A DNA stretch of 63,531 nucleotides, counting the filler, from Octopus bimaculoides (lineage: Eukaryota): the NCBI RefSeq assembly GCF_001194135.2. It is 4 parts of 4 records of this genome, joined end to end, with 100 filler letters (N's around TTAATTAATTAA, not from the genome) between each part and the next. Parts side by side here need not be neighbours in the genome. Positions count along the whole stretch, not along the records: positions 16,986 to 46,752 come from NC_069007.1; 3 more parts are not named here. One strand, 5' to 3'. The notes under the pieces are model-generated. The model searched no databases. It was not told the origin of the DNA and saw nothing but the letters and a program-made list of their open reading frames with translations. Below, in pieces: positions 17,071 through 43,300 of this stretch. Each line of letters opens with the position of its first letter. Positions within the stretch are counted from its first letter, which is position 1. Both the position numbers and the translations under genes were made by a program.

Positions 17071-17439
17071 GTAATAACACTAATCACAAGCAGAATAAGT
17101 GATCTTTAGGACAGAAGGATTTATTTAATTACTTCAGCTCATCTAGCAAAATGAATGCTTATCGCTTTGAAAGACTCACCTGTTTCCGGTCAATGTAATT
17201 AGTTCCGTAGAACTAAGAAAGACAATCTTACCACAAAATTGGATTGTTTTATCTTGTAACAGCACGTGTTCTCAGAAAGGTACGAGTTATAAATATATAT
17301 ATATATATATATATANNNNNNNNNNNNNNNNNNNNNNNNNNNNNNNNNNNNNNNNNNNNNNNNGATTTATTATTAGTGTTGCTTAATATGTTTTGCAAAA
17401 ATTGCTGTTTCGTTTCAGATATCATCAGAAAAAGGTAAT

Positions 17440-18160
17440 TAAAATTCATTAAAATGACAGAACTATCGGACTTTCAAAGAAGTCAAATTATTGGTGCTTG
17501 TATGGCAGGCACTAGTGTGTCTCGAAAGTAATGACAGCCTTTGAGAAAGAGGGAACAATCTCCTCATCGAAACAAACCTCCGGAAGAAAACCAAAACTTT
17601 CAGATAGGGACCATCGGACTCTTACACGAATTGTTAGAAAGGATCACAAAGTACAGCTCCCAAAATTACTGCAGAGCTTAATGACCACCTCGAGAATCCA
17701 GTTTACACAAAAACTGTTTGCTGGGAGCTGCACAAAGCTGGATTTCACGGGAGGGCTGCAAACCACTATTTTCAAAAACAAACATTGCAAAGGGTTTAGA
17801 GTGGAATAAAAACCCTAGAGAAGTGGAAGAATGTTATTTTCTCGGACAAGTCATCCTTTTCTTTATTTTCAACCACCGGCCGAGTATACGTGTGGAGACA
17901 GTCAAAAGAAGGATTTGACCCAGACTGTCTTCTTCCAACTGTTAAACATGGAGAAGGATCTGTGATGATCGNNNNNNNNNNACAGTCAAAAGAAGGATTT
18001 GACCCAGACTGTCTTCTTCCAACTGTTAAACATGGAGAAGGATCTGTGATGATCGGGGGAGGGGGGCTATATCTTGGAAATCCGCCAGCCCAATGGTTTC
18101 CCTTCATGGCGGAATTAATAGTCAAGATTATTTAAGCATTTTATCTGATCAAATTCATCC
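17440..18160 (+). mobile_element. Decayed Tc1-like transposon
   Basis: MTELSDFQRSQIIGA, SGRKPKLSDRD and DCLLPTVKHGEGSVMI. Confidence 0.8.
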
Positions 18161-20569: not shown

Positions 20570-20666
20570 GTGAAAGTCTCAAAGGAGGAGCAAAGAAAAT
20601 ATTTATATGAAGCCCACCGCCAATGTAACATTTCAAGTGACGAGGTTTCAAGTTCGAATCCAGAAG
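20570..20666 (+). CDS. PTHR: PTHR-like exon: N-terminal ECD helix VKVSKEEQRKYLYEAHRQCNISSDEVSSSNPE
   Basis: tttcag acceptor, gttggt donor, 97 nt, phase 0 to 1; contains the first ECD Cys. Confidence 0.85.
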
Positions 20667-26600: not shown

Positions 26601-29600
26601 TATTTTATTGATCTCTTTTGCCGAACCGCTAAGTTACGGGGACATAAATACACCAGCATTGGTTGTCAAGCAATGTTGGGGAGACACAGACACACAAATA
26701 TATATATATACATATAAATATATACGACGGGCTTCTTTCAGTTTCCGTCTACCAAATCCACTCACAAGGCTTTGGCCAGCTGGAGGCTATAGTAGAAGAC
26801 ACTTGCCCAAGGTGCCACGCAGTTGGACTGAACCCGGAACCATGTGGTTGGTAAGCAAGCTACTTACCACACAGCCACTCCTGCACCATAGAGAACAAAC
26901 CTTTGGTAAAAAGAGTTTAGGAAGACTTAAAAGACAGCTATAGCACAACATGAAGGAATAAATACACACACACATTTAATATGTATACGATGTGTATATT
27001 TGACAGCACTGGCAATGCAAAGTATTGTTCTCTTTGTTCCACTACACACTGGCTGCCAACTACATATGGATTTTGATGGAAGGGCTCTATCTACACAACC
27101 TCGTCACGGTGGCCATGTTTTCTCAGAAGAGCGGAGTCAGACCATATATTGTCGTTGGCTGGTGTAAGTTGATAACTAATAACTTCTTAGGTGATCTTTC
27201 GATACTAGTCCACCACAACTTCCGGTCGTTGCGCGTACGCATACTGATTACATGATCGTATAGTGTGTTTGTTTTTAAATGACTTGAAAATATGAAAAGA
27301 CAACATTAAATAGAAACTCAAACCTTCTCCCCCTCAGATGCATACAGTTCTCAAACTTTAAACACATAAACACACTATACGATCATGTAATCAGTATAGG
27401 AAGGAGATACGCCACTGTGGAGGTGCGCTTCACAACGGAGGAGGAAGCAAATAAAGCACTCTGCAGAGGCAATAAGGACAGAGGAATGGGTGCTCTTGCC
27501 TTCGTACTGCGGCAAACGTGTGGCCAAGGTGCGAGTGAGTAAGGTGCCATCCGAACTGAAACTTTAAACACATAAACACACTATACGATCATGTAATCAG
27601 TATGCGTATGCGCAACGACCGGAAGTTGTGGTGGACTAGTATCGAAAGATCGCCACTTCTTTTCTTTTTTTCCTATTACTGTCACATTACTGTATCGTTG
27701 TTTGTTTTTTTGCATCTAACATTTGACTAGGTAGAGCATGAAGTTTTCCTTCGTTTATTATATAAGGAAAAGGAGATGGTGCAATGGTCACAAGATTGGA
27801 AGGACTTTTGTCGTTTACTCTTTAAGAATAGAACATATCTTCATCAAATTCTTCAAAGAAAGAGGCGCTGTGGTTATCCCCTTAAGTTTCTAAAATTTTT
27901 TGTAAAAATGACTAGAATTCCCTCTCTCACTCTCTGGGAGAGAGGCACAAGCACAAGGGGAATACATCTACTCCCAGCATATGACCATACACCAGAGACA
28001 ACAAGTAGAGGGCTGTTGATTGTTACTCTTTTACTTGTTTCAGTCATTTGACTGTGGCCATGCTGGAGCACCGCCTTTTAGTCAAGCTAATCGACCCCAG
28101 GACTTATTCTTTGTAAGCCTAGAACTTATTCTATCGGCCTCTCTGCCAAACTGCTAAGTTACGGGGACGTAAACACATCAGCATCGGTTGTCAAGCGATA
28201 TTGGGGGACAAACACAGACTCACACACACACACACATACATACATATATATATANNNNNNNNNNNNNNNNNNNNNNNNNNNNNNNNNNNNNNNNNNNNNN
28301 NNNNNNNNNNNNNNNNNNNNNNNNNNNNNNNNNNNNNNNNNNNNNNNNNNNNNNNNNNNNNNNNNNNNNNNNNNNNNNNNNNNNNNNNNNNNNNNNNNNN
28401 NNNNNNNNNNNNNNNNNNNNNNNNNNNNNNNNNNNNNNNNNNNNNNNNNNNNNNNNNNNTATATATATGTACATATATATGACAGGCTTCTTTCAGTTTC
28501 TGTCTCCCAAATCCACTCACAAAGCTTTGGTCGGCCCGAGACTATAGTAGAAGACACTTGCCCAAGGTGCCACGCAGTGGGACTGAACCCGAAACCATGT
28601 GGTTTGTAAGCAAGCTACTTACCACACACCCACTCCTACGCCTTTATTCGTGATTTAAAATTTGTTTAATAACATTTTGAGTGAGTGTTTTTGTTTTGTA
28701 AACCTTTGTGAAATAATGACAGACAATAATGTGTCCAAAAAAGAGGAAGTGGTACACCCAAAATGTCAAGAAGTCATGGTTGAAGAATGCTGAGCTTAAA
28801 GATTGGTTACAGCATGATAAAAATCTTGTCACTTGTTACTGTGTTTGTTGCAACATTGTGTTGAAAATTGCTAACAAATCAATGCTGTTAGCTCATAAAA
28901 ACACTGCCAAACACAAAGAAGCTTTAGATTGTGCGAAATCTGCTATTAAATTAGATTCATTTATTGTTAAAACGAACAGATGACACATTAAAGGAAAAAG
29001 TAGCTAAGGCAGACATGCTTACTAACAGGCTATGTTGCCAAACATCACGTACCTTTCATCCATATAAATCACTAAGCTGAAATTTGTTGAAAGGCCTTTC
29101 CCGATAGTGAAATAGCTAAAAATCTACAAATGAAAAAAAACAAAATTAACATACATTATGCAAGACGGAATTGCACATTTTGAACAAAATGAAATCTTGG
29201 AAATTCTCAAGAAACAAGTTTTCATTATTGATAGATGAGAGTACGGGATATCTCAGTGACACAAATTTTAGCAATGGTTGTTTGCTTTTTTGATGAACAA
29301 TCGCTTAATAAGGGCAAGGTTATCGCAACACATTTTCACAGAGAGGATTAAAGCACCGTGAAATGAAGAGCCTTGCATAATGCCCCATTCGACCTGAGAA
29401 TTGAACCCACGCACTAACAATCATGAACCTAAACACAGATGTCTCGTGGCTTCACCCGGATCATATACTACTCTTTTACTTGTTTCAGTCTTTTGACTGC
29501 GGCCATGCTGGAGCACCGCCTTTAGTCGAGCAAATCGACCCTAGGACTTATTCTTTGTAAGCCTAGTGCTTATTCTATCGGCCTCTTTTGCCGAACCGCT

Positions 29601-29663
29601 AAGTTACGGGGATGTAAACACACCAGCATCGGTTGTTAAGCGATGTTGGGGGGACAAACACAG

Positions 29664-29700
<37 letters not shown>

Positions 29701-31822
29701 TACGACGGGCTTCTTTCAGTTTCCGTCTACCAAATCCACTCACAAGGTTTTGGTCGGCCCGAGGCTATAGTAGAAGACACTTGCCCAAGGTGCCACGCAG
29801 CGGGGAATGAACCCGGAACCATGTGGTTGGTAAGCAAGCTACTTACCACACAGCCACTCCTGCGCCTATGATAATGTTACTATTGTTGTAAACCGCATTA
29901 TCGATAATGGTATATGCTTGGCAGTAAACAACCTGTCAGAAAGATCAAACACCGGAAGCAGACAGTAATTTTAGGTTCCATATTACAATTGCTGTTGTTA
30001 TTGTCATTGTTGTTGTTGATGATGATGATGATGATGTGTTTATTGCAAATGTTGTTGTCATTCTACTTTTAGTTTCATTTTTGAAATTTCCAACATTACC
30101 TTTTTTTTCCCCGTGATTGCTTTTATATTTTTTTGTAGATTAGTTTTATTGTCGTTACCATTACAATTTTCTGTTATTATATTTCATCTTTTTTTTTTTG
30201 AGTGATTGTTTTTTTCTTCATTGTCATCTGTTTTTTGTTTTATTTCGTTCCGTTGCCATTTTTGTCTATATAATTTTTAAAATGTTTTTTTGTAAACACT
30301 AATAAGGTTTCCATGATGTTTGTAACAACAAAAACAAACATAACCATTCTTGGGTCGATGGCATGACAAAGAAATATAGTAGTAGTAGTAGTGGTGGTGG
30401 TGGTATTAGTAGTAGTAGTGGTGGTGGTGGTATTAGTAGTAGTAGTGGTGGTGGTGGTGGTGGTAGTATCAGTAATAGTAGTAATGTAGTGGTGGTGAAG
30501 GTGGTTGTGGTGGTATTAGTAGTAGTAGTGGTGGTGATAGTAGTAGTAGTAGTAGTAGTGGTAGTCGCAGTGGTTGTGGTGGTAGTGGTAGTATTAGTAA
30601 TAGTAGTAATGTAGTAGTGGTGAGGGTGGTATTTTTAGTGATGGTGGTGGTAGTAGTAGTAGTAGTGGTGGTGGTGGTATTAGTAATAGTGGTAGTCGCG
30701 GTGGTGGTGGTGGTGGTAGTGGTGATATTTGTAGTAGCAGTGTGCTGGTAGTATTATAGTAGTAATGTAGTAGTGGTGAAGGTGGTGGTGGCATTTGTTG
30801 TAGTAGTAGTAGTAGTGGCGGAAGCAGTAGTGGTGGTGGCGGCGGTGGCAGTGGTAGTGGTTTTGGTGGTGGTGGTGGTGGTGGTGGTTGTGTTGGTAAT
30901 CGTTGTAGTTATCATTGTGATGGGATGGTTGTGGTAGTCGTGGTGGCATAAGAAAACGCTGCTCTAAATTCTACTGAAGTGTCATTTTCTACTTGCAGGT
31001 TTTCCGTTTAGTTTTGTGATTCCATGGGTTGTTGTGAGGCTGTTTCTAGAAGATACATAGTAAGTACTACAATTATAGCTGTTGTATAGCCCAAGGTCAG
31101 CCCTGATCCAGCACCACACCTATGATCAAAACGAATTTTAGTCATAATCACATCTTACTTTCAAGCCTGGTGCATCTAGCACTATATTAAATCATTAAAT
31201 ATGTAAACTGATCAGGTATATATGTATGTAGGAATATCTGTACATACACACAGATACATACACAAGTATATATATAAATGTGTGTGTGTGTGTGTTTGTA
31301 AGCCGTCTAAGAGTTCATAAGTCAGGAAAAAATGCAAGTGTATATCTGGCAGTAGAGTGGGTATGCTAATTGAAGTATTATATATCCATTACGACCGAAC
31401 TTACCAATTGGTTTTGCACCAGTGGTTCAATGGAGTGTTAGTTAACAGTCTGGTTATGTAACCCTGTGCTCTTCAGAGGAATCCGTTATGGAATGAAATA
31501 TGGCAACTGTTCTCCATTGTTGGAGATGAATAGAAAGTTGACCTCAGTTGAATTTGAACTCAGAACATAAAGACGGATAGAATGCTACTGAGCTTTTTGC
31601 CCGGCCTGCTAACGATTCTGCCAGCTCACCACCTCAATAATAATAATAATGATAATAATGATTTCTTGTTTATCATTTCAGCTGCTGGTACACTCATTCA
31701 AACAAGGCATATTTTTGGATTATGAAGGGCCCCATTATGGGATCAGTTATGGTAAATACCAGTCTTCTATGGACAATATACATGTCTGTGTGTGTGTGTG
31801 TGAGTGTATACATGTATGTTTG

Positions 31823-31853
<31 letters not shown>

Positions 31854-31874
31854 GTGTGTGTATGTGTGTGTGTG

Positions 31875-31913
<39 letters not shown>

Positions 31914-34900
31914 GTATATATATGGGGGGAGAGAGAGAGAGAGAATGATGAACATAAAGAGATAAAAGTCTTTGGTTTTATATATAGAATATTTATACAT
32001 GTAAATAAAAAAATAGGCAAAGAGGGGGCAGATATGATTACAAATCCGACAGCTGTTTCTGGGGGCTCAGAGTTACTTCATAATGTTGGCAGATGTAGTT
32101 CAGCAAAGAATTGCAACCAGTAATGGAAGGAAACAAACATTATCAAGCCTCCTTCTTCTGCGTGGCACCTTGGGCAAGTGTCTTCTACTATTGCGATTGG
32201 GCTGACCAAAGCCTTGAGAGTGGATTTGGTAGACGGAAACTGAAAGAAGCCCATCATATATCTGTGTTTGTCATCCTTCCACCACTTGACAACTGTTCTT
32301 GGTGTGTTTACATCCTCATAACTTAGTGGGTTGGCAAGAGAGACCAATAGAATAATTACTAGGCTTAGAAAAATAAGTCCTGGTGTCAATTTGTTTGACT
32401 AAAAAAACCCTTCAAGACAGTGCCCCAGCATGATCACAATCAAAGTAAAAGGAAATCAATATTTTGAAGAAACTTGAAATCCCAGTCACTAATCAAGATA
32501 TTTTGATTTTAATAGATAGATATATAATACTCTGTTATATTATAAAATGCTATTGAGTTATTTATTGAAGTTTGTGTTGTTTTTTTTATTCTAATGAACA
32601 CTTTCCCGTATATACTCCACACATACATGCATACAAGGGGTTACTGAAAAGTTCCTGGCTTTAAGGGTCACATGAACGGCCTGTCTGGAGGCCCAACCTT
32701 CTGAGTTCTTTTACAGAGGTTAGAAAAACTGAAGGACTGCTGCAATAAGTGTGTAAATCTGAGAGGAATATGTTGAATAAAATCACAAACTGATCCTCCA
32801 TTTTCTTTTATATGTGTGTGTGTACACTATATTTCTGTACTTCACAGATTAACTTCTTGTTGTTCCTCAACATTATTCGAGTGCTATTCAGCAAGTTTGA
32901 TATGAACCGGCCAAAGAAAAGAGCCAGAAATAACCGCTACAGGTCAGTATTTGTGACACTGAGAAGTCCTTTTGGCGATCTTACGGTACAAGTCCTAAAT
33001 ATCAGCCTTTTCTGTAAAAAGTGTTGGTGAGAAACAGGGTAACGACATCATAACAGCAAAAGACATACAGAGAGCGCGATTTATTTTGAAGGGTTTAAGG
33101 TTAGGGTTTTAGGGTTTGGGTTAGGGAATTCCGTCCCTAACCGTAACCCTAAAACCCTAACCCTGACACTAAAACCCTAACCCTAACACCGTAGTGAAGA
33201 TCGTGCAGGTGTTACGGAAAAGGCCGATCTTTGGTAAAGATCGCCGAAGACACTTTTTATGGAAAAGACCGATATTTAGGACTCATACTGTAAGATCGCC
33301 GTCCTTTTTAAATCACATATCTTTCTCATTACCATCATCTAACCAAACCACTTTTACTTCTCTCTCATTTTATCTTCATTTTCTCACTTTATATACTTAT
33401 ATATGCGTTTATGCAAGTTTGTATTTATTTACTCAAGCATATCATCATCATCATCATCGTCGTTTAATGCCCACTTTCCATGCATGGGTTGGACGATTTG
33501 ACTGAGGACTGGTGGACCAGGTGGCTACACCAGGCTCCAATCTGATTTGGCAGAGTTTCTACAGTTGGATGCCCTTCCTAACGCCAACCACTCTGAGAGT
33601 GTAGTGAGTGCTTTTACGCACCACTGGCACGAAGGCCAGAGAGGCGGTACTGGCAACGGCCACGCTTGAAATGGTATATTTTACGTGCCACCTGCACAGG
33701 AGCCAGTCCAGCGGTACAGGCAACAACCTCGCTCGAATGTCTTTTTACGTGCCAGGAAGGTGACAGATTGAATTGGCATAAATTTGAGAGTATTAAACTT
33801 TTCCATTTACCAACTGAAAAAGTTTTCAGTAATTCTAAGACTACTTTTAGTTTCAAGAATTGCATTGCATGTCCTAATAATTCTTTCTAATTTTTGCAAA
33901 ATTTTGCAATGAACAGAAGTGACGGGGACGTAAACACACCAGGAAGGCCAATATTCCATGATCCAGGTTACACATAGACTTCACAGGACCATTAAACCGA
34001 TCATATTATCAAATAGTGGTAAGATAGCTTTAAAAAAAATGGCCAGAAATGTGTAAATGTAGAAAACCAACATCAATGGTAATAGTAGAATTTCTACGCC
34101 AACTTACATCCATATTTTCTTTCCACCTCCTCTTCTTTTTCTTTCTGCGCTTCTCCCAACTTCTTAATGTTTCTTCTATCAATTCACAGACGATTGGCAA
34201 AATCGACACTGGTTCTAATCCCATTATTTGGCATCCATTACATGGTCTTCCTCTGGCTCCCAGATGACATTGGCAAGAAAGCAGAACTGGTGAAACTATA
34301 TTTCGAGATGCTGTTTAATTCATTCCAGGTGAGACTCTAATCTGTTTGTCAGAAAATAGCCCTACTAAGTATTGTGAACATTACAATAGAGTACTTTCCA
34401 AAACAATATAACATCATCATCACCATCATCATTTAACATCTGTTTTCCATGCTGGCATGGGTTGGATGACTTGACAGCAACTGGCAAGGCCAGGGGCCTC
34501 ACCTGGTTTCATAGTCTGTTTTGGTTTGGTTTCTACAACTGGATGCCCTTCCTAATGACCACCACTTCACAGAGTGTACTGGGTGCTTTTTATGAGTAAT
34601 CAACACAGGTACTTCTTTTCCATGGGTCCCACTAGCAATAAAAATGATAATACAAACACTAACACATGTAGCTTGTTCAATTTATCATTCTTTGTCTTTC
34701 CAGGGACTATTTGTTGGGATCTTGTTTTGTTATATGAATGCAGAGGTAAGTTTCCGAATGGCCAATGAAATCTTTAAGTTCTTGATTACTAACTTTTCCC
34801 TACATACACCCCTAATCTGATTATTGTATCACCACTGTGCTGTTGTTGTTGTTGTTGTAGTTGCTTAGCTTTCTGCTTAACCCTCATTAAACAGATCTTA

Positions 34901-36040
34901 TCTTTCCAGTCGTTACTAGACTATCTTCAGAAGTCTGGGTCAACATTGTTCAATGCAGACTTCTTATTTAAAATGGCGTGTGATTTGAAAATTCAACTGT
35001 TATTTCTAGCAAAGTAGAGACTCACCCATTGACTCATGATATGTCCTGTGTTTCACCATGAACACTCTCACTAATTTTCATTGCGTACTCAAGGGATCAA
35101 GGCAAATTTGCAAGTTCAAATGACCCTTGAAGATCACAAAGCCACACCGCAGTTGTGACTATTTGGGGATACTCATCATCACACTCAACATCACCATCAT
35201 CATCACCATCATCACACTCATCCTCACACTCATCTTCACCATCATCACCATCACCATCACCATCACACTCATCATCATCACCATCACCATCATCACACTC
35301 ACCATCACCACACTCATCTTCACCATCACCATCACCATCACACTCATAATCATCATCACTATCATCATCACCATCACCATCACCATCACCATCATCATCA
35401 CCATCACCACACTCATCACCATCATTGTCATTATTATTGTCTTCTTCTTTAGGTCCAGTCAGAATTACGCAAAATGTGGATGCGCAAGAAACAAGGTCGG
35501 CTTGACTCAGCCTCTTTACCACGCAGCCAGTGGCAGACATTCTTCTCTTCTTCGATCATGCGCAACCGCAGTTCCGTGCGTTGCACCAACTCCCCTTCTC
35601 ACTGCCATTATCAAATGCAAACGGCCACACCATCGCCACCCACAAGGCAGACGGCAAGGTCGAATTTGCCAACAGTGCTACAACCATCGCCACCACTACC
35701 AGCATCACCACTGCTAACCCTGCGAGCGATGCAGACTCGCTCCCACCCTCAAATGCAGACCCTGGTGCAGTTGCATCCTTCGTCAACATCAATGCAGAAA
35801 CACCAAGACCTACCTAAGAAATGGCCGGGCAAAAGTGATGTGGTCGTCTTGACGAAAGGACTGAACAGTTCCAACTTTGGCATCGTTACTACAATAACCC
35901 CTACCAACACCATCATTACAAGCACCAACAGCATAATTCGTAACACCAACATTGCAGATACTAACATCGACCCCGACACCATCACTGCCAACAGAAGTAA
36001 AACAGACAAAAACGGCAGTGTTACAGAAAGCCCTGTATAA
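20570..36040 (+). CDS. PTHR: Parathyroid hormone receptor-like class B1 GPCR, 12 coding exons: 20570-20666, 21533-21643, 21797-21909, 23438-23532, 24704-24872, 27007-27163, 30999-31059, 31682-31751, 32848-32942, 34190-34328, 34704-34745, 35453-36040 (5' signal-peptide exon(s) not secured)
   Basis: All introns are GT-AG and phases chain 0-1-1-0-2-0-1-2-0-2-0-0, giving 1737 nt in frame. The six-Cys hormone-binding domain has WDG and CWP motifs. Seven TMs carry class B motifs RLHCSRN, HINMF, WILMEGLYLH, KSTLVLIPLFG and EMLFNSFQG. SKEEQ..A..QC and EMLFNSFQG match PTH1R as I recall it. Confidence 0.93.
20794..21198 (-). mobile_element. SINE family A, full length
   Basis: Pol III A/B-box-like head (tggctgtgtgg / ggttc..tccc) and gagtaaaa tail. 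Confidence 0.88.
21533..21643 (+). CDS. PTHR: PTHR-like exon: GARCSSIWDGILCWPQTLAGTVAELQCPSYINNFYTN
   Basis: ttcgcag acceptor, gtaact donor; class B CxxxWDGxxCWP...CP motif. Confidence 0.95.
21797..21909 (+). CDS. PTHR: PTHR-like exon: GLVSRKCMENGQWYVLERYNRSWTNYSQCFGETNRWVK
   Basis: ttttag acceptor, gtaatt donor; RxCxxNGxW...WTNYSQC motif. Confidence 0.95.
22050..23030 (-). mobile_element. R4/Dong-like non-LTR retrotransposon fragment (RT end, CCHC knuckle, RLE)
   Basis: WLRSSGLKAETEGFLIAAQDQSLPTRNY, CRIC...ETISHI and LWDMPIYTDREIEANR.DIVV. Confidence 0.75.
23438..23532 (+). CDS. PTHR: PTHR-like exon, TM1: VHLSHIPIIYTIGYGISLVSLCGAVLVMLYFR
   Basis: ttgcag acceptor, gtaagt donor; YTIGYxxSLxSL motif. 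Confidence 0.95.
24704..24872 (+). CDS. PTHR: PTHR-like exon, ICL1/TM2/ECL1: RLHCSRNMLHINMFMSFILRAAVCLIKEQLLVDGFGLPDDLQTHSNGQFYFRDDSS
   Basis: ctgcag acceptor, gtgagt donor; RLHCxRNxxHxNxFxSFILRA motif. Confidence 0.95.
25190..25490 (+). mobile_element. R4/Dong-like LINE RLE 3' fragment
   Basis: Similar to 14400-14700 (SCPADINISLKIKEKED..QLLRNL). Confidence 0.6.
26499..26887 (-). mobile_element. SINE family A, full length
   Basis: Same head, body and tail as the other copies. Confidence 0.88.
27007..27163 (+). CDS. PTHR: PTHR-like exon, TM3/ICL2: HWQCKVLFSLFHYTLAANYIWILMEGLYLHNLVTVAMFSQKSGVRPYIVVGW
   Basis: tgacag acceptor, gtaagt donor; WILxEGLYLH motif. Confidence 0.95.
27190..27654. mobile_element. 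Non-autonomous TIR element (465 bp, about 90-bp TIRs, GG(T/C)GATCT ends) carrying a captured fragment
   Basis: 27190-27280 is the reverse complement of about 27565-27654; TSD acttctta/acttcttt. Confidence 0.85.
28024..28643 (-). mobile_element. SINE family A with an internal gap at its microsatellite
   Basis: Both halves match family A. Confidence 0.85.
28700..29310 (+). mobile_element. hAT transposase 5' fragment (Zn finger plus first catalytic D)
   Basis: WL..KDWL...CYCVCCN...HKNTAKH, then FSLLIDEST.ISVTQILAMVVCFF. Confidence 0.7.
29466..29867 (-). mobile_element. SINE family A, full length
   Basis: Same head, body and tail as the other copies. Confidence 0.88.
30375..30950. repeat. Compound (TAG)/(TGG) trinucleotide low-complexity tract
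   Basis: Direct reading; ends about 50 bp before the receptor exon at 30999. Confidence 0.95.
30999..31059 (+). CDS. PTHR: PTHR-like exon, TM4: (C)FPFSFVIPWVVVRLFLEDT
   Basis: ttgcag acceptor, gtaagt donor, 61 nt, phase 1 to 2. Confidence 0.92.
31682..31751 (+). CDS. PTHR: PTHR-like exon, ECL2/TM5: (Y)CWYTHSNKAYFWIMKGPIMGSVM
   Basis: tttcag acceptor, gtaaat donor; CW and WIxxGP motifs. Confidence 0.92.
32153..32450 (+). mobile_element. SINE family A, 5'-truncated and diverged
   Basis: ctgcgtggcaccttgggcaagtgtcttc...ggaaactgaaagaagccc. Confidence 0.8.
32848..32942 (+). CDS. PTHR: PTHR-like exon, TM5/ICL3: INFLLFLNIIRVLFSKFDMNRPKKRARNNRYR
   Basis: tcacag acceptor, gtcagt donor; NFxxFxNIIRVLxxK motif. 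Confidence 0.93.
32974..33300. mobile_element. MITE (327 bp) with GGCGATCT TIRs and internal back-to-back telomere-like repeats
   Basis: Perfect 8-bp TSD gtcctttt (32966-32973 and 33301-33308); about 50-bp TIRs; (TTAGGG-like)n-gaattc-(CCCTAA-like)n core. Confidence 0.9.
33440..33770 (-). mobile_element. SINE-like family D with (CAT)n/(TGA)n tail; related copies at 34410-34600 (-) and 36655-36855 (+)
   Basis: Shared ccatgctggcatgggttgga...ggatgcccttccta sequence. Confidence 0.7.
34190..34328 (+). CDS. PTHR: PTHR-like exon, TM6/TM7: RLAKSTLVLIPLFGIHYMVFLWLPDDIGKKAELVKLYFEMLFNSFQ
   Basis: tcacag acceptor, gtgaga donor; PxxG motif. Confidence 0.95.
34704..34745 (+). CDS. PTHR: PTHR-like 42-nt TM7 exon: GLFVGILFCYMNAE
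   Basis: ttccag acceptor, gtaagt donor; phase 0/0, same size as the 14-codon TM7 exon of vertebrate class B1 receptors. Confidence 0.95.
35170..35440. repeat. (CAT)/(CAC) trinucleotide tract at the 3' end of the last receptor intron
   Basis: Direct reading. Confidence 0.95.
35453..36040 (+). CDS. PTHR: PTHR-like last exon: helix 8 (VQSELRKMW) and long S/T-rich C-tail ending TESPV*
   Basis: ctttag acceptor, 588 nt to TAA; joins the ORF-track ORF 35474-36040. Confidence 0.85.
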   Translation, partial: VQSELRKMWMRKKQGRLDSASLPRSQWQTFFSSSIMRNRSSVRCTNSPSHCHYQMQTATPSPPTRQTARSNLPTVLQPSPPLPASPLLTLRAMQTRSHPQMQTLVQLHPSSTSMQKHQDLPKKWPGKSDVVVLTKGLNSSNFGIVTTITPTNTIITSTNSIIRNTNIADTNIDPDTITANRSKTDKNGSVTESPV

Positions 36041-36057
36041 AGACACAAAGTTAGTCA

Positions 36058-36140
36058 CGTAGGAGTGGCTGTGTGGTAAGTAGCTTGCTTACCAACCACA
36101 TGGTTCCGGGTTCAGTCTCACTGCGTGGCATCTTGGGCAA
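36058..36140 (+). mobile_element. SINE family A head only, in the receptor 3' UTR
   Basis: gtaggagtggctgtgtggtaag...ggttcagtctcactgcgtggca. Confidence 0.8.
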
Positions 36141-37330
36141 CATAGACATACCTGATTCTGTAGTATTGCTTTACAAAGTATTGGATAAATGTCCTACATA
36201 ACTTCCATATCTTTTTCTGAAAATTTCTTTGTATTTTTTATATTTTAAACACTGGTTTTGCCTAATTGCAAGAGTTTACCATTTTTGTTCCATTCATTTC
36301 AAGTATGTGCCTGGTGGTATTTCCCATTTGCATTTTTTTTTTCATAGGTGCAGGGGTGGCTGTGTGGTAAAACTATCGAAAATCAATTCTATTCAAAAAT
36401 ATAGCTAATCTTTAGGTCAAAATACAACAATAATAAAAATAAAAGAATGCATATATCAACCAACAATAAATAACAAATGAATGCATATAAAATACTTATA
36501 ATATTAAGATAGAAAAATATTAAAAATATCAAAATTATAAACGTTCGATAATTAACTTTATGTTTATTATAATATAAGCTAACAGGAATATTATATGCAA
36601 AAACTAATTTTAGCAAATCTTTCGTTTAAAATACAATTTGAAGATTTTAATTGCTGGTGCCATGTAAAAAGCACTGGTGATGGTGCCACATAAAAGGCAC
36701 CCAGTACACTCTGGAGTGGTTGGCACTAGAGACCAAGCCGAAACAGACTATGAAATCTGATACAGCCTCTGGTCTTACCAGTTCCTGTCAAGCCATCCAA
36801 CCCATGCCAGCATGGAAAACAGACATTAAATGATGATGATGATGGTGATGATGATAATGAATAATAGAAGGAAGCGGAGGTGGAGGATACCTCATCACCA
36901 TTCTTTTTTATGACATCATCAATAGAAACCCAATCACCAATAGACATCTTTAACAGAAACCTAAGTGTTTGTGTTCTAAATAAAAGAAATCCTTCCTCCA
37001 ACAATAACAGAATGAAATAAACAAAGTATATTTTGTAACATGTTTATAAAATATACATTCATTCATGCATACGTGTGTATATACACACACACACATCTGC
37101 GCACACTCACACACATATGCATACACCCACACACATATGCATACAATAAAGAATATTGGTGGCTTGCAGTGTGTCAAATGGGATAAATAAACTCCATCTC
37201 TGACACAACAACAACAACATTAACTGCTGTTGTTAACACTACAACAAATACTACTATTAATAATAATAATAATAATATTCCTTTCTACAACAATAGTAAC
37301 TGGATCTTTTATTTACCGCAAAGTCAACAA

Positions 37331-38167
37331 ATGGGCACCATTAGGAAGAGCAGAAATGAAAATAATAATAATGTTGATACCGTCACCTCATCTACCAGAG
37401 TTATTTCCTCTAACCTCAGCCATGTCATTATTCTAATAAGCATTTTAATAGTCCAGCTGCAGCAAAAAGGCATCATGGCATTTCGCGTCAATATCTCAGC
37501 CAGACACCGACATGTGTTCAAAGCACATTTGTTCCGAGAACATGCATCAATCCAGTTACATGGTCAGATATCAGCAGGAGAAAGAGCGTTTCTCCTCCAT
37601 CAGGCAGCAGCCATTGGGGCCAATCGAACCAAACCCAACAACACGTCGCTTGCGACCCCTGGTGGTATGATGAATGATAATGTTCATGACGGTGATGATA
37701 GTGCTGAAGGGGAATCAATGACCTTGACCCAAACTTACGACGATAACAGCAAAGTTCCGAAAGATTTAAATGTGGTGGATGAAATCCGCACCCTTCTGAA
37801 TTTACCAAACGAAATGAGGGACCCAGCAGCGGGGGAAGCCACTTCAAAAGAACAGGAGCAGTACCAAATGAACCAACAAGAGTCGGAGATGGGTGCAGAG
37901 GGAGAAGATAGTGATGACGATGAACTGGAATATGAAGATTATAATTATGAAGAGAACAATAACCAAATCTACATCTTTGACAACAACAACGAAACCAATG
38001 ATAATTATTATGGGTATAAGATACCAAGTGTTCTCTTCATTTTCGTCATATCCATGAATGTCACAATGACAATATTGTACCTTGGCATCTTTGCAATGGC
38101 ATTATTCTTGTCATCAGAGAAAAGAGTCCAAAAGATTAAATTAACAGACATCTGTACTAAAATATGA
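37331..38167 (+). CDS. Intronless 278-aa orphan ORF, predicted single-pass membrane glycoprotein
   Basis: 837-nt stop-free frame in unique, non-repetitive sequence; caaATGG context; hydrophobic VIILISILIV segment; several N-x-S/T sequons; acidic D/E tract; C-terminal hydrophobic segment followed by a basic tail. Confidence 0.6.
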   Translation: MGTIRKSRNENNNNVDTVTSSTRVISSNLSHVIILISILIVQLQQKGIMAFRVNISARHRHVFKAHLFREHASIQLHGQISAGERAFLLHQAAAIGANRTKPNNTSLATPGGMMNDNVHDGDDSAEGESMTLTQTYDDNSKVPKDLNVVDEIRTLLNLPNEMRDPAAGEATSKEQEQYQMNQQESEMGAEGEDSDDDELEYEDYNYEENNNQIYIFDNNNETNDNYYGYKIPSVLFIFVISMNVTMTILYLGIFAMALFLSSEKRVQKIKLTDICTKI

Positions 38168-38748
38168 TTTTATACACACATACACACACACATATATATA
38201 TATATATATATCATCCCACCAAAATACAATATTATTTGCAAGTTTCTATAAATTGTTTTTGTAGTTTTTAATGCTTTTATTATTAGAATCGGATTCTTTT
38301 GTATTCCATATTGCATTTATTTAGAACATAAGTCTACAACTATGCCTTACAGGTCAAAGTGGTTTGCAACCTCATTTCATCCAGCCCACCATTTTATTGA
38401 AAATGTGATGTTGCACAGACAAATCCTTTGTTGTCTTAATCCATCTTTCTTCAGCAAACAATAAAAATCTCATTTTTGTAATGGGCTCAAATGAATCAGT
38501 TTCATAGTTAAAAAAAAAAAAACAAAGAAGAAAAAGGCAAGATCCTTTCGCATGGTAAAAATGTAAGTTTCCACTGGATAAGATACAGTAATACCTCGGT
38601 TTTTGAACACCTCTGAACATGACTAAATCATGCTTTATATATATATATATATATAAAGCACGATTTATTCGTGATCAGAGCTGTTCGAAAACCGGGGTAC
38701 TATACTGTATTATACATTTTTTACTTTCCTAATAATCAGGACAACAGA

Positions 38749-38947
38749 TACTCTCTTTACTCTTTTACTTGTTTCAGTCATTTGACTGTGGCCATGCTGG
38801 AGCACCGCCTTTTAGTCGAGCAAATCGACCCCAGGACATATTCTTTGTAAACCTAATACTTATTCTATCGGTCTCTTTTGCCGAACCGCTAAGCTACGGG
38901 GACATAAACACACCAGCATCGATTGTCAAGCGATGTTGGGGGTACAA

Positions 38948-38980
<33 letters not shown>

Positions 38981-39158
38981 CATATACATATATACGACGG
39001 GCTTCTTTCAGTTTCCATCTACCAAATCCACTCACAAAGCTTTGGTCAGCCCGAGGCTATAGTAGAAGACACTTGCCCAAGGTGCCACGCAGTGGGACTG
39101 AACCCAGAACCATGTGGTTGGTAAGCAAGCTACTTACCACACAGCCACTCCTACGCCT
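38749..39158 (-). mobile_element. SINE family A, full length
   Basis: Same head, body and tail as the other copies. Confidence 0.88.
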
Positions 39159-39565
39159 ATACTGGGAGCATCTCATAAATTATCATAATATAAATTGCAT
39201 GGGATAAGGTGGTGAGCAAGCAGAAGTGTTACTGAGCAAGGCAAAATGCTTTGCAGCATTTCAATAGTCTTTACATTAAGAGTTCAAATTCCGCCTTTGT
39301 TTAAGAAAAAATATAGACTACAGGTAGTCTTGACATGTCTGTGTAGTAAGGTCGGTGGTGTCTCGACAAAAAATCATCACCCAGTTTGCACTTTTGAAGA
39401 CACACAGAATAAGAAACCTACTTGAAAAGCTGTAGGAAGAGAAAGGCCATTTGGCTCTTAAAAAAAAATGTGTCAGTAACATATTCATCTAACCAATGCA
39501 AACATGGAAAAACACATGAAAACAAACAAAAGAAAGAAAATACATAATTCATATATATATATATC

Positions 39566-39935
39566 TTTTACCTTTTACTTGTTTCAGTCATTAGACTGCA
39601 GCCATACTGGGATACTACTTCAAAGACTTTTAGTCAAACAAATCGATCTCAGTACGTAAATTGCTTTATGCCTGGTATTTATTTTATTGGTTTCATTCGT
39701 TGAACTGCTAGGTTAAGGGGTTGTAAACACATGGACACTGGTTGTCAAGTGGTGGTAGGGAGAAAACACACTAACACACACACACACACATATATATATA
39801 CATACACACACATAAGGTTTTATTCAGCCTGAGGCTATAGTCAAAGACACTTGCCCAAGGTGCCAAGCAGTAGAACTGAACCTGGAACCATGTGGTTGGG
39901 AAGCAAATTTGTTACCACACAGCCATGCCTGCACC
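39566..39935 (-). mobile_element. SINE family A, older and diverged
   Basis: Same plan with many substitutions. Confidence 0.75.
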
Positions 39936-39966
39936 TGTCTATCTATAGATATGCATATACATATAC

Positions 39967-40303: not shown

Positions 40304-43300
40304 CTACAGTGACAGGAAGAAACAACAATGACAAAAACAATGTTTAGTAACATTGAACATGAAACAGCAACAAGAACAAGAACAAGAACAACTTCAATAG
40401 CAACAATACCAATAGAAGACAAAACAAAAAAACACCAAAGTGGTAGACTTAGTCATGCACCGAGGTTAACACAACCATAATGCCCACCACCACTGGTTTG
40501 GGTCCTGGCGTGTTTTTTATGAATTGCACACAGTCGCAATTGCACACATAGGCGCAGAAGTGGCTGTGTGGTAAGTAGCTTGCTTACCAACCACATGGTT
40601 CCGGGTTCAGTCCCACTGCGTGGCACCTTGGGCAAGTGTCCTCTACTATAGCCTCGGGCCGACCAAAGCCTTGTGAGTGGATTTGGTAGACGGAAACTGA
40701 AAGAAGCCCGTCATATATATGTATATATATATATATGTATATGTGTGTGTGGTATGTTTGTGTGTCTGTGTTTGTCCCCCTAGCATTGCTTGACAACTAA
40801 TGCTGGTTTGTTTATGTCCCCGTCACTTAGCGGTTCAGCAAAAAGAGACCGATAGAATAAGTACCAGGCTTACAAAAGAATAAGTCCCAGGGTCGATTTG
40901 CTCGACTAAAAGCGGTGCTCCAGCATGGCCGCAGTCAAATGACTGAAACAAGTAAAAGAGTAAAGTCGTGGTAACTTTCAGATCAGGTCTTCTTGTCCAG
41001 GAGTAAACAATTCAGTAGCTAGATACACTGCTTCCAACAACAGCAACCACCCGTGTGTTTATAGGCTCTCTTTCTATTTCTTCTCAGTCATCTCATGTTT
41101 GTTTTGGCGACTTTGTTTTAAACTAATTTAAAACAAGTCCTCTCACTGGTTGAAAAGATTTCAGCTGAAATCATTCTAGATTTTAGCTAGAATTGTTCTA
41201 AAAAGTATTTCAGAACGAACACTTCTAGAAACTTCCATGGGAAGTTATAAAAGTCTGGATTTTTTCCGATTTTAGCTANNNNNNNNNNNNNNNNNNNNNN
41301 NNNNNNNNNNNNNNNNNNNNNNNNNNNNNNNNNNNNNNNNNNNNNNNNNNNNNNNNNNNNNNNNNNNNNNNNNNNNNNNNNNNNNNNNNNNNNNNNNNNN
41401 NNNNNNNNNNNNNNNNNNNNNNNNNNNNNNNNNNNNNNNNNNNNNNNNNNNNNNNNNNNNNNNNNNNNNNNNNNNNNNNNNNNNNNNNNNNNNNNNNNNN
41501 NNNNNNNNNNNNNNNNNNNNNNNNNNNNNNNNNNNNNNNNNNNNNNNNNNNNNNNNNNNNNNNNNNNNNNNNNNNNNNNNNNNNNNNNNNNNNNNNNNNN
41601 NNNNNNNNNNNNNNNNNNNNNNNNNNNNNNNNNNNNNNNNNNNNNNNNNNNNNNNNNNNNNNNNNNNNNNNNNNNNNNNNNNNNNNNNNNNNNNNNNNNN
41701 NNNNNNNNNNNNNNNNNNNNNNNNNNNNNNNNNNNNNNNNNNNNNNNNNNNNNNNNNNNNNNNNNNNNNNNNNNNNNNNNNNNNNNNNNNNNNNNNNNNN
41801 NNNNNNNNNNNNNNNNNNNNNNNNNNNNNNNNNNNNNNNNNNNNNNNNNNNNNNNNNNNNNNNNNNNNNNNNNNNNNNNNNNNNNNNNNNNNNNNNNNNN
41901 NNNNNNNNNNNNNNNNNNNNNNNNNNNNNNNNNNNNNNNNNNNNNNNNNNNNNNNNNNAGATTTCAGCTGAAATCATTCTAGATTTTAGCTAGAATTGTT
42001 CTAAAAAGTATTTCAGAACGAACACTTCTAGAAACTTCCATGGGAAGTTATAAAAGTCTGGATTTTTTCCGATTTTAGCTGAAATCATTCTAGATTTTAG
42101 CTAGAATTGTTCTAAAAAGTATTTCAGAATGAACACTTCTAGAAACTTCCATGGGAAGTTATAAAAGTCTGGATTTTTTCCGATTTTAGCTAGTGGATAT
42201 CTAGTCTTCTGGAAGCTATGTCACTGACTCACTCTCACATACATTTTGTTGTATTCAATCGTTCTTGCTATGTTGATACAACATGCTTGCTTTCCTCCAC
42301 AATGGCCTTAAATCATATATCTTATTTATCTTTAGATCAGTTGAAAGGAACTAGATAAGAGATTCAGCTCTTGTCATCTCTCTACATGAAAGATAACTTT
42401 TAGACCAAAAAGAATTAGATTCGATTTCCGGCTATGCTCTTGTGGCTTACACTTGTCTCTATTGACGAAGGGAGATTACTCTAGGCTGCTTAAACGAGAA
42501 TCCAATGGAAATATTTTGGAATTGATGTTTTAGCATTTCTCCACAAATGTATTTTGACGATGCTTGACATTTTACCAACAGCAAGTATGAAAGAATTTAG
42601 TTTTAATGAAAGGCACATTCATGTCACTCGCAACACATTGTGTCAATTTGAAGATATTATCTCCGGAGGAATATATTATTGACCACATAATGATGATGGC
42701 ACTCCGTTGCTTACGACGTCGAGGGTTCCAGTTGATCCGATCAACGGAACAGCCTGCTCGTGAAATTAACGTGCAAGTGGCTGAGCACTCCACAGACACG
42801 TGTACCCTTAACGTAGCTCTCGGGGATATTCAGCGTGACACAGAGTGTGACAAGGCTGACCCTTTGAAATACAGGCACAACAGAAACAGGAAGTAAGAGT
42901 GAGAGAAAGTTGTGGTGGAAGAGTACAGCAGGGTTCGCCACCATCCCCTGCCGGAGCCTCGAGGAGCTTTTAGGTGTTTTCGCTCAATAAACACTCACAA
43001 CGCCCGGTCTGGGAATCGAAACCGCGATCCTATGACCGCGAGTCCGCTGCCCTACCACTGGGCCATTGCGCTTCCACTTGACCACAGAATAAGTTGAAGA
43101 CAACCAAATAGAAAATGTAGAACGGAATACAACACTAAAGTATATAATGTCTGGCATGGTAATGGCTGGAACACAACAGATAACACTAATTAATACAAGC
43201 TAAGGAGAGGGCCTACTATAAAATACAATTGCTTTTCTGTCTTAAAAAGATCTAAAGACCAAACTTAAGGTAAGATAATAAAAACAGCAGCAGCAGTCAA

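What the first reader, a model, noticed from the sequence alone, without database searches (positions are those of the whole stretch)
37331..38167. Orphan intronless membrane-protein ORF wedged between the receptor and TMEM98
This is a 278-codon ORF in unique DNA, 1.3 kb downstream of and co-oriented with the receptor. It has a long n-region, a hydrophobic signal-like segment ending IMA|FRV, a His-rich stretch (RHRHVFKAHLFREH), several N-glycosylation sequons, a D/E/Y-rich acidic stalk, a C-terminal TM and a short basic tail. I recognise no family. His and acidic tracts could bind metal or Ca2+, which is intriguing beside a PTH-type receptor. It could be a lineage-specific gene, a read-through/bicistronic product or a receptor accessory protein; that functional link is speculation.
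Basis: partly seen in the sequence, partly recalled or inferred. Interest (0 to 1): 0.72.

Follow-up and report, generated by a model that had tools for sequence, protein, structure and literature searches.

The report
Octopus-only membrane protein gene beside receptor
The open reading frame is a real, selectively maintained protein-coding gene found so far only in octopuses; it most likely encodes a small acidic membrane glycoprotein of unknown function, and gene catalogues disagree on whether it stands alone or is an alternative last exon of the neighbouring hormone receptor.

Summary
The 278-codon ORF (37331-38167, +) exists exactly as described. It is not chance: the frame is open from the same ATG in five sequences from three octopus lineages, every indel is a multiple of three, and dN/dS is 0.22-0.32 against about 1 in control frames. 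Synteny (PTH-type class B receptor, ORF, TMEM98) holds in O. sinensis and O. vulgaris. No relative outside Octopus turned up in 1.84 billion representative proteins, Pfam or the PDB. AlphaFold gives a disordered chain with two hydrophobic helices. It is not repeated in the loci read.

Best reading: an octopus-restricted gene for a type I membrane glycoprotein, with a long signal peptide, a basic His-rich block, an acidic Tyr-rich stalk, a TM helix and a basic tail ending in TKI.

It is already catalogued inconsistently. O. sinensis has 'uncharacterized LOC118768334', started at Met49. O. vulgaris has it fused as the last exon of 'PTH2 receptor-like', skipping an intact canonical exon. O. bimaculoides, the source of this window, has no protein entry for it.

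No RNA data were available, so the transcript structure and any functional link to the receptor are unresolved. Resemblance to PTH ligands or RAMPs was tested and rejected. Interest is modest.

The parts
37331..38167 (+). Complete ORF (278 codons plus stop) of the octopus-restricted gene. Orthologue of O. sinensis LOC118768334.
   Evidence: Open in all five orthologous sequences. dN/dS is 0.22-0.32.
37331..37480 (+). Residues 1-50: a variable N/S/T-rich n-region (1-30), a hydrophobic h-region HVIILISILIVQL (31-43), and a c-region QQKGIMA with a putative cleavage site IMA|FRV. Probable long signal peptide.
   Evidence: Hydropathy. The ATG and about 30 nt upstream are near-invariant in five sequences. 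dN/dS of these codons is 0.26-0.35 with upper CI below 0.76. There is a third-position excess of substitutions. No dedicated signal-peptide predictor was available.
37455..37457 (+). AG|C: a putative internal 3' splice site, with the exon starting at 37457 (codon 43, LQQKGIMAFRV...). The O. vulgaris model CAI9741683.1 uses it to join the receptor TM7 exon to this ORF in frame.
   Evidence: It is phase-0 compatible. The pyrimidine fraction is 0.56, against 0.50-0.89 for the 11 real acceptors, and a competing AG lies 5 nt upstream in the window.
37481..37630 (+). Residues 51-100: the most conserved block, basic and His-rich, with two predicted helices. It contains RHRHVFKAHLFREH (37502-37543), which arose from a 15-nt tandem duplication, and conserved sequons at N54 and N98.
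   Evidence: 40 of 50 residues are invariant in three lineages.
37631..38023 (+). Residues 101-231: a disordered acidic stalk (net charge -26). It includes the conserved helix PKDLNVVDEI.TLLNLP and a juxtamembrane Tyr-rich acidic cluster ELEYEDYNYEE...NDNYYGYK (37898-38023).
38024..38110 (+). Residues 232-260: a transmembrane helix with an invariant polar face (M-N-x-T-M).
   Evidence: KD19 hydropathy reaches up to 2.09. AlphaFold predicts a helix at 233-277.
38111..38167 (+). Residues 261-278 plus stop: a basic tail SSEKRVQKIKLTDICTKI (+3). The C-terminal T-K-I is invariant and fits a class I PDZ-ligand pattern.
36650..37330 (+). Conserved non-coding block upstream of the ORF, 86-100% identical to O. 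vulgaris and with no codon periodicity. It contains AATAAA at 37145 and 37186 and a (CA)n tract at 37083-37145. It could be the promoter and 5' UTR of the ORF gene, or the distal 3' UTR and poly(A) site of the receptor.
34704..34745 (+). Receptor TM7 exon (GLFVGILFCYMNAE) with donor GAG|gtaagt, phase 0.
35453..36040 (+). Canonical last coding exon of the receptor (helix 8 VQSELRKMW... to ...TESPV, then stop). It is intact, 88-90% conserved in O. vulgaris and O. sinensis, and recognisable in cuttlefish.

Best explanation
The ORF is a genuine protein-coding gene, known so far only from Octopus, lying between a PTH-type class B receptor gene and TMEM98. The most likely product is translated from the conserved ATG at 37331.

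Its first ~50 residues would act as a long signal peptide. These comprise a variable N/S/T-rich n-region, a 13-residue hydrophobic core, and a small-residue site IMA|FRV.

The mature protein would then be a type I single-pass membrane glycoprotein with:
- an N-terminal basic, His-rich helical block;
- a long, intrinsically disordered, strongly acidic stalk that carries conserved N-glycosylation sequons and a juxtamembrane Tyr-in-acid cluster, the kind of context that tyrosine sulfation uses;
- one TM helix with a conserved polar Asn/Thr face;
- an 18-residue basic cytoplasmic tail ending in T-K-I, which fits a PDZ-ligand pattern.

Inferred mechanism, not shown: the acidic, possibly sulfated ectodomain binds cations or basic partners at the cell surface or in the secretory pathway. 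The polar TM face and PDZ-type tail would couple it to other membrane or scaffold proteins.

Shown: coding status, conservation, synteny, sequence features and absence of relatives. Inferred: start codon, cleavage, topology, modifications and function.
For: Coding status:
- The frame is open from the same ATG in the window, O. sinensis, O. vulgaris and two Logan contigs. All indels are multiples of three.
- Nei-Gojobori dN/dS is 0.22-0.32 with bootstrap upper bound at or below 0.50. The three other sense and antisense control frames give 0.96-1.41. The one wobble-sharing antisense frame carries 9-10 stops.
- Substitutions by codon position are 18/17/54.

Upstream start:
- The ATG sits in an A(-3)/G(+4) context, and about 30 nt upstream are near-invariant.
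- The 47-71 codons before Met49 have dN/dS 0.26-0.35 with upper CI 0.55-0.75, and a third-position excess of 16/35, 15/32 and 19/34.
- The hydrophobic core changes only by I/L/V/F/A swaps.

Topology:
- The tail after the TM carries +3 and the flank before it about 0.
- Four sequons are positionally conserved in the putative ectodomain.
- The EYEDY/GYEEY cluster and the C-terminal TKI are conserved.

Other points:
- Synteny holds in O. sinensis and O. vulgaris.
- NCBI annotates a separate gene in O. sinensis with two protein accessions.
- No homologue was found in Pfam, the PDB or 1.84 billion representatives.
- AlphaFold mean pLDDT is 35, with only the two hydrophobic helices above 50.
Against: - No transcript, ribosome or peptide evidence could be consulted.
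- NCBI's O. sinensis CDS starts at Met49, not at the upstream ATG. The O. vulgaris model enters the ORF through an internal acceptor at codon 43. Two pipelines therefore did not use the upstream start.
- No protein for the ORF is on record for O. bimaculoides.
- A 30-55-residue n-region is unusual for a signal peptide.
- The N-terminal region contains AAT/ACT trinucleotide repeats. These keep a frame open without selection, and a protein-guided alignment there biases dN/dS downward.
- The upstream conserved block with AATAAA at 37186 could be the receptor's poly(A) region rather than a promoter.
- Sulfation, glycosylation, PDZ binding and cation binding are pattern-based inferences only.
Confidence: 0.55

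Rival explanations
1. Alternative last exon of the receptor. Transcripts from the receptor promoter skip the canonical last exon and splice the TM7 exon (34745, phase 0) to the acceptor at 37457. The result is a receptor isoform whose helix 8 and PDZ-ending tail are replaced by a 236-residue acidic tail ending in an extra hydrophobic helix. This may coexist with an independent transcript.
For: - O. vulgaris CAI9741683.1 (655 aa, 'parathyroid hormone 2 receptor-like') has exactly this structure.
- The acceptor CAG|CT is conserved in all five sequences and is in frame.
- NCBI's choice of Met49 in O. sinensis would fit a transcript whose exon begins at that acceptor (inference).
- The ORF starts only 1.3 kb after the receptor stop and about 145 nt after an AATAAA.
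Against: - The skipped canonical exon is intact, 88-90% conserved in octopuses, recognisable in cuttlefish, and ends in ESPV in both.
- The two O. bimaculoides RefSeq isoforms retrieved here (X2 and X3) and the O. sinensis receptor all use the canonical exon.
- The O. vulgaris annotation merges ab initio, protein and transcript evidence, so the model need not reflect an RNA (PMC10700109).
- The acceptor is weak (pyrimidine fraction 0.56). In the window it is preceded by a competing out-of-frame AG 5 nt upstream.
- Codons upstream of the acceptor show dN/dS below 1.
- The topology would place the basic tail outside and the conserved sequons in the cytoplasm.
Confidence: 0.15
2. Independent gene translated from Met49 (37475), as annotated in O. 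sinensis. This gives a 230-residue tail-anchored protein with a cytosolic basic/acidic disordered domain, a TM inserted post-translationally, and an 18-residue basic lumenal tail. The upstream 48 codons would be 5' UTR.
For: - NCBI XP_036370481.1 and XP_036370483.1 start at this Met.
- Met49 has an A(-3)/G(+4) context and is invariant.
- The TM lies 18 residues from the C-terminus, which fits the tail-anchor geometry.
- Conservation rises sharply from about 37441.
Against: - The upstream ATG, its context and the hydrophobic segment are conserved, with coding-type substitution patterns.
- With the upstream ATG in the mRNA, scanning ribosomes would initiate there first.
- Conserved sequons and the sulfation-type Tyr cluster would be cytosolic and meaningless.
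- A conserved PDZ-type C-terminus would be lumenal.
Confidence: 0.15
3. Not a protein-coding gene. Under this reading it is a fortuitous ORF in the receptor's 3' UTR or in intergenic DNA, in a lncRNA, or in a transposable-element remnant.
For: - No protein is annotated in O. bimaculoides.
- The flanks are low-complexity and AT-rich.
- Flanking non-coding DNA is as conserved as the ORF at nucleotide level.
Against: - dN/dS is 0.22-0.32 against about 1 in control frames, with strong three-base periodicity.
- Five out of five frames are open across dS up to 0.69.
- It is single copy, with no TE domain or repeat match.
Confidence: 0.04

Closest known systems
Octopus sinensis uncharacterized protein LOC118768334 (XP_036370481.1 / XP_036370483.1)
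   Same: Orthologue. It is 83% identical over 230 residues and sits in the same position between the PTH-type receptor and TMEM98.
   Different: It is annotated from the internal Met49. The genomic frame there is open for 301 codons from the same conserved ATG as in the window. O. sinensis also carries a fourfold tandem duplication of the start-codon region and a minisatellite at the stop.
Octopus vulgaris CAI9741683.1 'parathyroid hormone 2 receptor-like' (655 aa)
   Same: Its last 237 residues are the orthologue of ORF residues 43-278.
   Different: The gene model fuses them to the receptor after TM7 and omits the intact canonical last exon. The model is probably chimeric, or a minor isoform.
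Syndecan-type type I membrane proteins (disordered acidic ectodomain, conserved TM, short tail with a PDZ-binding C-terminus)
   Same: The overall architecture is alike, as is the pattern of conservation: the TM and tail are more conserved than most of the ectodomain.
   Different: There is no Pfam Syndecan match, no Ser-Gly glycosaminoglycan sites and no sequence similarity. The resemblance is architectural only.
RAMPs (single-pass accessory proteins of class B GPCRs)
   Same: A single-pass membrane protein that could in principle partner a class B receptor. It lies next to one.
   Different: There is no RAMP domain hit. It lacks the Cys-stabilised three-helix ectodomain: the only Cys is in the tail. 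The ectodomain is predicted to be disordered.
PTH-family and protostome PXXXamide/iPTH ligands
   Same: Proximity to a PTH-type receptor, and short motifs (SIQLH, ERAFLL) that recall PTH/PTHrP.
   Different: Similarity to PTH, PTHrP and TIP39 is at chance level: 5-55% of shuffles score as high. The ectodomain has no dibasic cleavage or amidation sites. The known protostome ligand is a conventional amidated neuropeptide (PMC7224569).

Membership tests
Taxonomically restricted (orphan) protein-coding gene | Evidence of coding selection among close relatives | tested here: met
   dN/dS is 0.22-0.32, the control frames are about 1, and the frame is open in 5 of 5 sequences.
Taxonomically restricted (orphan) protein-coding gene | No detectable homologue outside the lineage | tested here: met
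   Only octopus sequences were found in 5.8 billion clustered proteins and in a profile HMM search of 1.84 billion representatives. Pfam and the PDB gave nothing. No match lies within 10 kb of cuttlefish TMEM98 or the cuttlefish receptor orthologue. Unannotated ORFs in other cephalopod genomes could not be searched.
Type I membrane protein with cleavable signal peptide | N-terminal hydrophobic core followed by small residues at -3/-1 | tested here: inconclusive
   The h-region at residues 31-43 has KD11 up to 3.14, and I-M-A|F is conserved. The n-region is 30-55 residues long, and no SignalP-type predictor was available.
Type I membrane protein with cleavable signal peptide | Single downstream TM with a positive-inside cytoplasmic flank | tested here: met
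   The TM is at 232-260. The tail carries +3 and the preceding flank about 0.
Tail-anchored protein | Single TM within about 30 residues of the C-terminus and no N-terminal signal sequence | tested here: inconclusive
   The TM position fits. Absence of a signal holds only if translation starts at Met49, and the upstream codons look coding.
RAMP (PF04901) | RAMP domain with conserved cysteines forming a three-helix ectodomain | tested here: not met
   hmmscan gave no hit at E up to 10. The protein has one Cys, located in the tail.
PTH family (PF01279) or PXXXamide/iPTH precursor | Sequence similarity to the hormone; signal peptide followed by dibasic cleavage and, for iPTH, a G-basic-basic amidation signal | tested here: not met
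   No Pfam hit. Shuffle tests are non-significant. The ectodomain sequence has no KR/RR/GRR. Precursor features are taken from PMC7224569.
Transposable element or repeat | Multiple copies, or TE protein domains | tested here: not met
   Single copy in the window and in the 73-kb and 21-kb orthologous loci. No Pfam TE domain. A genome-wide copy count was not possible.
Alternative terminal exon of the class B receptor gene | Conserved in-frame 3' splice site, with transcripts joining it to an upstream receptor exon | tested here: inconclusive
   An in-frame conserved AG is present but weak. The junction exists only in one automated gene model. RNA evidence was not available.

The most novel reading that the evidence does not exclude
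The ORF is functionally coupled to the adjacent PTH-type receptor in one of two ways. It could be an octopus-specific single-pass accessory subunit, co-scaffolded through PDZ-type C-termini (TKI on the ORF product, ESPV on the receptor). Or it could be a genuine alternative 3' exon that gives a receptor isoform with an acidic tail and an eighth membrane helix. Either would be a lineage-specific innovation in class B GPCR signalling.
Probability: 0.12. Interest if true: 0.7.

Novelty: new member of a known kind. Interest (0 to 1): 0.33.

Why it matters
This is a clean example of a lineage-restricted gene under purifying selection in a cephalopod, a group whose innovations are often attributed to novel genes. 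It also exposes three mutually inconsistent annotations of one locus: absent in O. bimaculoides, truncated in O. sinensis, and fused to a GPCR in O. vulgaris. That inconsistency matters for anyone using these gene sets, for example when counting or classifying class B receptors. If the product turned out to partner the neighbouring PTH-type receptor, it would be a new kind of GPCR accessory protein. Nothing found here shows that.

Tried and rejected
- PTH-like ligand idea. The motifs SIQLH and ERAFLL looked like PTH/PTHrP. Local alignment against PTH(1-34), PTHrP(1-36) and TIP39 (sequences recalled from memory) was matched or beaten by 5-55% of shuffles. The idea was rejected.
- RAMP, syndecan, HRC or any other Pfam family: no hit, with the best E-values at 0.035 and far below the cut-offs.
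- PDB sequence search with the three-species profile: nothing at E up to 10.
- AlphaFold2 with the three-sequence alignment gave mean pLDDT 35 and pTM 0.18. The model was too poor for a fold search, so none was run.
- Antisense 169-aa ORF (37518-38027, minus strand): its frame has dN/dS of about 1 or more and shrinks to 116-122 codons in O. sinensis and the SRR contigs. It is a by-product.
- Rfam scan of 36000-38600: only sub-threshold hits on the (CA)n tract.
- Deeper conservation: cuttlefish loci around TMEM98 and around the receptor orthologue, with 10-kb flanks, show no ORF homologue. This is inconclusive because the flanks are short and the two genes lie on different scaffolds.
- Transcript evidence: exact look-ups of the 278-aa and 230-aa products found nothing. 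SRR11869390 and LOC118768334 appear in no searchable paper or in the octopus brain atlas supplements. The two Logan contigs are bounded by microsatellites and are collinear with genomic DNA. Whether they come from RNA or DNA runs is unknown, so they say nothing about transcription.

Full report
**Observation**

The ORF is at 37331-38167 on the plus strand, with an ATG start and 278 codons.
- a hydrophobic core HVIILISILIVQL at residues 31-43, followed by QQKGIMA|FRV;
- RHRHVFKAHLFREH at residues 58-71, inside a block (49-100) with net charge +5 and six His;
- a region 101-231 with net charge -26;
- a hydrophobic helix at 232-260;
- a basic 18-residue tail;
- sequons at N54, N98, N103/104 and N220.

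I rebuilt the upstream receptor gene exon by exon. The window exons from 20666 to 36040 translate exactly to Octopus bimaculoides RefSeq isoforms, so the window is O. bimaculoides. The receptor's canonical last exon is 35453-36040. The ORF therefore starts 1,290 nt after the receptor stop, on the same strand. TMEM98 exons lie downstream on the minus strand. Among solved structures the receptor is closest to PTH1R and PTH2R (E about 4e-49, against 1e-42 for the secretin receptor). Automated names for it vary between secretin receptor, PTH2R-like and PTH/PTHrP receptor.

**Is it a gene?**

A search of 5.8 billion clustered proteins gave two clusters. One is O. sinensis 'uncharacterized protein LOC118768334' (230 aa, 83% identical). 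The other is a 303-aa ORF on Logan contigs from runs SRR11869390 and SRR11869394. The O. sinensis and O. vulgaris loci show the same gene order: class B receptor, ORF, TMEM98 on the opposite strand.

In all five sequences the frame is open from the same ATG, giving 278, 301, 301, 303 and 303 codons. Every indel is a multiple of three. Nei-Gojobori dN/dS is 0.22, 0.32 and 0.24 for the three lineage pairs, with dS of 0.43-0.69 and bootstrap upper bounds at or below 0.50.

The same calculation in the other frames gives 0.96-1.41, with one exception. The antisense frame that shares wobble positions gives a low value, but that frame carries 9-10 stops. Substitutions fall 18/17/54 on codon positions 1/2/3 between the window and O. 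vulgaris.

The DNA is single copy in all loci read and has no TE domain. Transcription could not be tested.

**Relatives**

A profile HMM of the three lineages, scanned against 1.84 billion representative proteins, found only the two octopus clusters. Pfam gave nothing near threshold and the PDB gave nothing at E up to 10. AlphaFold2 gave mean pLDDT 35, with only the two hydrophobic helices above 50. That fits a largely disordered protein and made a fold search pointless.

In the cuttlefish Acanthosepion pharaonis, neither the 10 kb beyond TMEM98 nor the 10 kb beyond the receptor orthologue contains a detectable homologue. The receptor's canonical last exon is readily found there. This supports an octopod-restricted gene but does not prove it.

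**Gene structure: three annotations disagree**

The 90% cluster of the O. sinensis protein also holds O. vulgaris CAI9741683.1, 'parathyroid hormone 2 receptor-like', 655 aa. That model joins the receptor TM7 exon (...FCYMNAE; window 34704-34745, donor GAG|gtaagt, phase 0) directly to LQQQQGIMAFRV.... The corresponding acceptor in the window is at 37457, inside the ORF at codon 43.

The model skips the canonical last exon. Yet that exon is intact and 88-90% conserved in O. vulgaris and O. sinensis. It encodes the class B helix 8 motif (EVQSELRKMW) and ends in ESPV in both octopus and cuttlefish. The two O. bimaculoides RefSeq isoforms retrieved (X2 and X3) and the O. sinensis receptor use the canonical exon.

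The O. vulgaris annotation is an EVidenceModeler merge of Iso-Seq and RNA-seq models, protein alignments and ab initio predictions (PMC10700109). The fusion is therefore not proof of a transcript. NCBI's O. sinensis model is a separate gene but starts at Met49. In O. bimaculoides no protein with either the 278-aa or the 230-aa sequence is on record.

**Which start?**

Several lines favour the upstream ATG:
- The ATG and about 30 nt before it (TCTTTTATTTACCNCNAAGTCAACAAATGG) are nearly invariant in all five sequences. The context is A at -3 and G at +4.
- The codons before Met49 have dN/dS of 0.26-0.35, with upper bootstrap limits of 0.55-0.75.
- Those codons show a third-position excess of substitutions, while the 170 nt upstream of the ATG show none.
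- The hydrophobic core changes only among I, L, V, F and A.
- The putative internal acceptor is weak. Its pyrimidine fraction is 0.56, against a range of 0.50-0.89 and a median near 0.78 for the gene's 11 real acceptors. In the window it has a competing, frame-shifting AG 5 nt upstream.

There are caveats. The N-terminal region contains AAT and ACT trinucleotide repeats, which keep a frame open without selection. The frame is also open for 10-55 codons upstream of the ATG. Protein-guided alignment lowers dN/dS. Two annotation pipelines avoided this start.

I therefore favour an independent gene translated from 37331 (about 0.55). A Met49 tail-anchored form and the receptor alternative-exon form each get about 0.15.

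**Topology and likely mode of action (inferred)**

With the upstream start, residues 1-50 form a long signal peptide. The mature chain is then type I.

Three observations fit a luminal or extracellular central domain and a cytoplasmic tail:
- the tail after the TM is +3 while the preceding flank is neutral;
- four sequons are positionally conserved in the three lineages;
- an EYEDY/GYEEY cluster with 4-6 acidic neighbours and no basic ones is conserved next to the membrane. This is the kind of context that tyrosine sulfation uses (general knowledge).

The TM has an invariant M-N-x-T-M polar face. The C-terminus T-K-I is invariant and matches the class I PDZ-ligand pattern.

The best-conserved parts are the basic His-rich block (40/50 invariant), a short helix PKDLNVVDEI.TLLNLP (17/19) and the tail (14/18). 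The His-rich stretch arose from a 15-nt tandem duplication.

My working mechanism is a cell-surface or secretory-pathway glycoprotein. Its acidic, possibly sulfated stalk would bind cations or basic partners. It would be held in complexes through its polar TM face and PDZ-type tail. None of this is shown.

**Link to the receptor**

Adjacency is conserved, but only among close relatives whose synteny is conserved anyway.

A ligand role is rejected. Similarity to PTH, PTHrP and TIP39 is at chance level. There are no dibasic or amidation sites. The protostome PTH-receptor ligand is the conventional amidated PXXXamide/iPTH peptide, first described in cuttlefish (PMC7224569).

RAMP membership is rejected: there is no domain hit, no ectodomain cysteines and a disordered ectodomain.

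An accessory role remains possible but unsupported. The only hint is that both proteins end in PDZ-type motifs.

**Flanks**

The 680 nt upstream (36650-37330) are 86-100% identical to O. vulgaris. That is more conserved than the ORF's third codon positions (77%), and there is no periodicity. The block holds AATAAA at 37145 and 37186, followed by a GU-rich run. It could be the ORF's promoter and 5' UTR, or the receptor's distal 3' UTR and poly(A) site. I could not decide between these.

**Verdict**

This is a real, conserved, octopus-restricted gene of unknown function. It is already present in databases as an uncharacterised or mis-joined model. It is ordinary in kind (a lineage-specific single-pass membrane protein) but a useful annotation correction. 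Interest is modest unless RNA or interaction data tie it to the receptor.

Noticed in passing
L001 9176-9847 (O. sinensis), matching window 37207-37368: O. sinensis carries four tandem copies of a ~170-bp unit that includes the ORF's start codon and first ~12 codons. The extra copies read as 18-codon upstream ORFs ending in TAA. O. vulgaris and the window have one copy.
   Followed up: partly
L001 10690-11115 and L004 63061-63470; window 38160-38192 is single copy: In O. sinensis and O. vulgaris the last codons, the stop and the following CA tract (ATATGATTTTATACACACAC...) are expanded into a ~20-copy, ~22-bp minisatellite immediately after the ORF. The first unit keeps the stop in place.
   Followed up: partly
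window 36650-37330: This non-coding block is 86-100% identical to O. vulgaris, more conserved than the ORF's synonymous sites. It contains AATAAA at 37145 and 37186 and a segment (36757-36856) that also matches dispersed repeats. Promoter/5' UTR or receptor distal 3' UTR was not resolved.
   Followed up: partly
window 34704-34745: O. bimaculoides RefSeq 'secretin receptor isoform X2' (P0125, 599 aa) lacks this 42-nt TM7 exon, which would give a six-TM product. Isoform X3 (P0127) lacks the TM1-TM2 exons (23438-23532, 24704-24872).
   Followed up: no
window 36026-36040; L007 about 49800: The receptor's canonical tail ends in ESPV in both octopus and cuttlefish. This is a class I PDZ-ligand pattern, reminiscent of the ETVM end of vertebrate PTH1R (from memory).
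   Followed up: no
window 37518-38027 (-): A 169-aa antisense ORF overlaps the gene. Its frame has dN/dS of about 1 or more. The longest open stretch in that frame is 171-172 codons in the window and O. vulgaris but 116-122 in O. sinensis and the SRR contigs, so it is a by-product of the sense codon composition.
   Followed up: yes
window 35160-35440: An intronic CATCAC/CACTCA minisatellite lies directly upstream of the last-exon acceptor. It produces long spurious ORFs on both strands, for example a 147-aa D/G-rich ORF at 35097-35540 (-).
   Followed up: no
window 29986-31485: A strongly G-over-C skewed low-complexity tract (GC skew up to 0.62) produces poly-Val/Gly/Ser ORFs. It ends just before the receptor exon at 30999-31059.
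   Followed up: no
window 20786-21198, 26498-26887, 28023-28647, 29463-29869, 38758-39161, 39560-39950, 40548-40965: There are many copies, in both orientations, of a ~400-bp SINE-like element with an internal microsatellite. The same element is also abundant in the O. sinensis and O. vulgaris loci.
   Followed up: no
window 37510-37544: A 15-nt unit repeated 2.3 times encodes H-V-F-K-A / H-L-F-R-E. This small tandem duplication created the His-rich stretch.
   Followed up: partly
window 17316-17363, 17972-17981, 28255-28459, 41279-41958: Assembly gaps (runs of N) lie inside the piece, two of them inside SINE or microsatellite copies.
   Followed up: no
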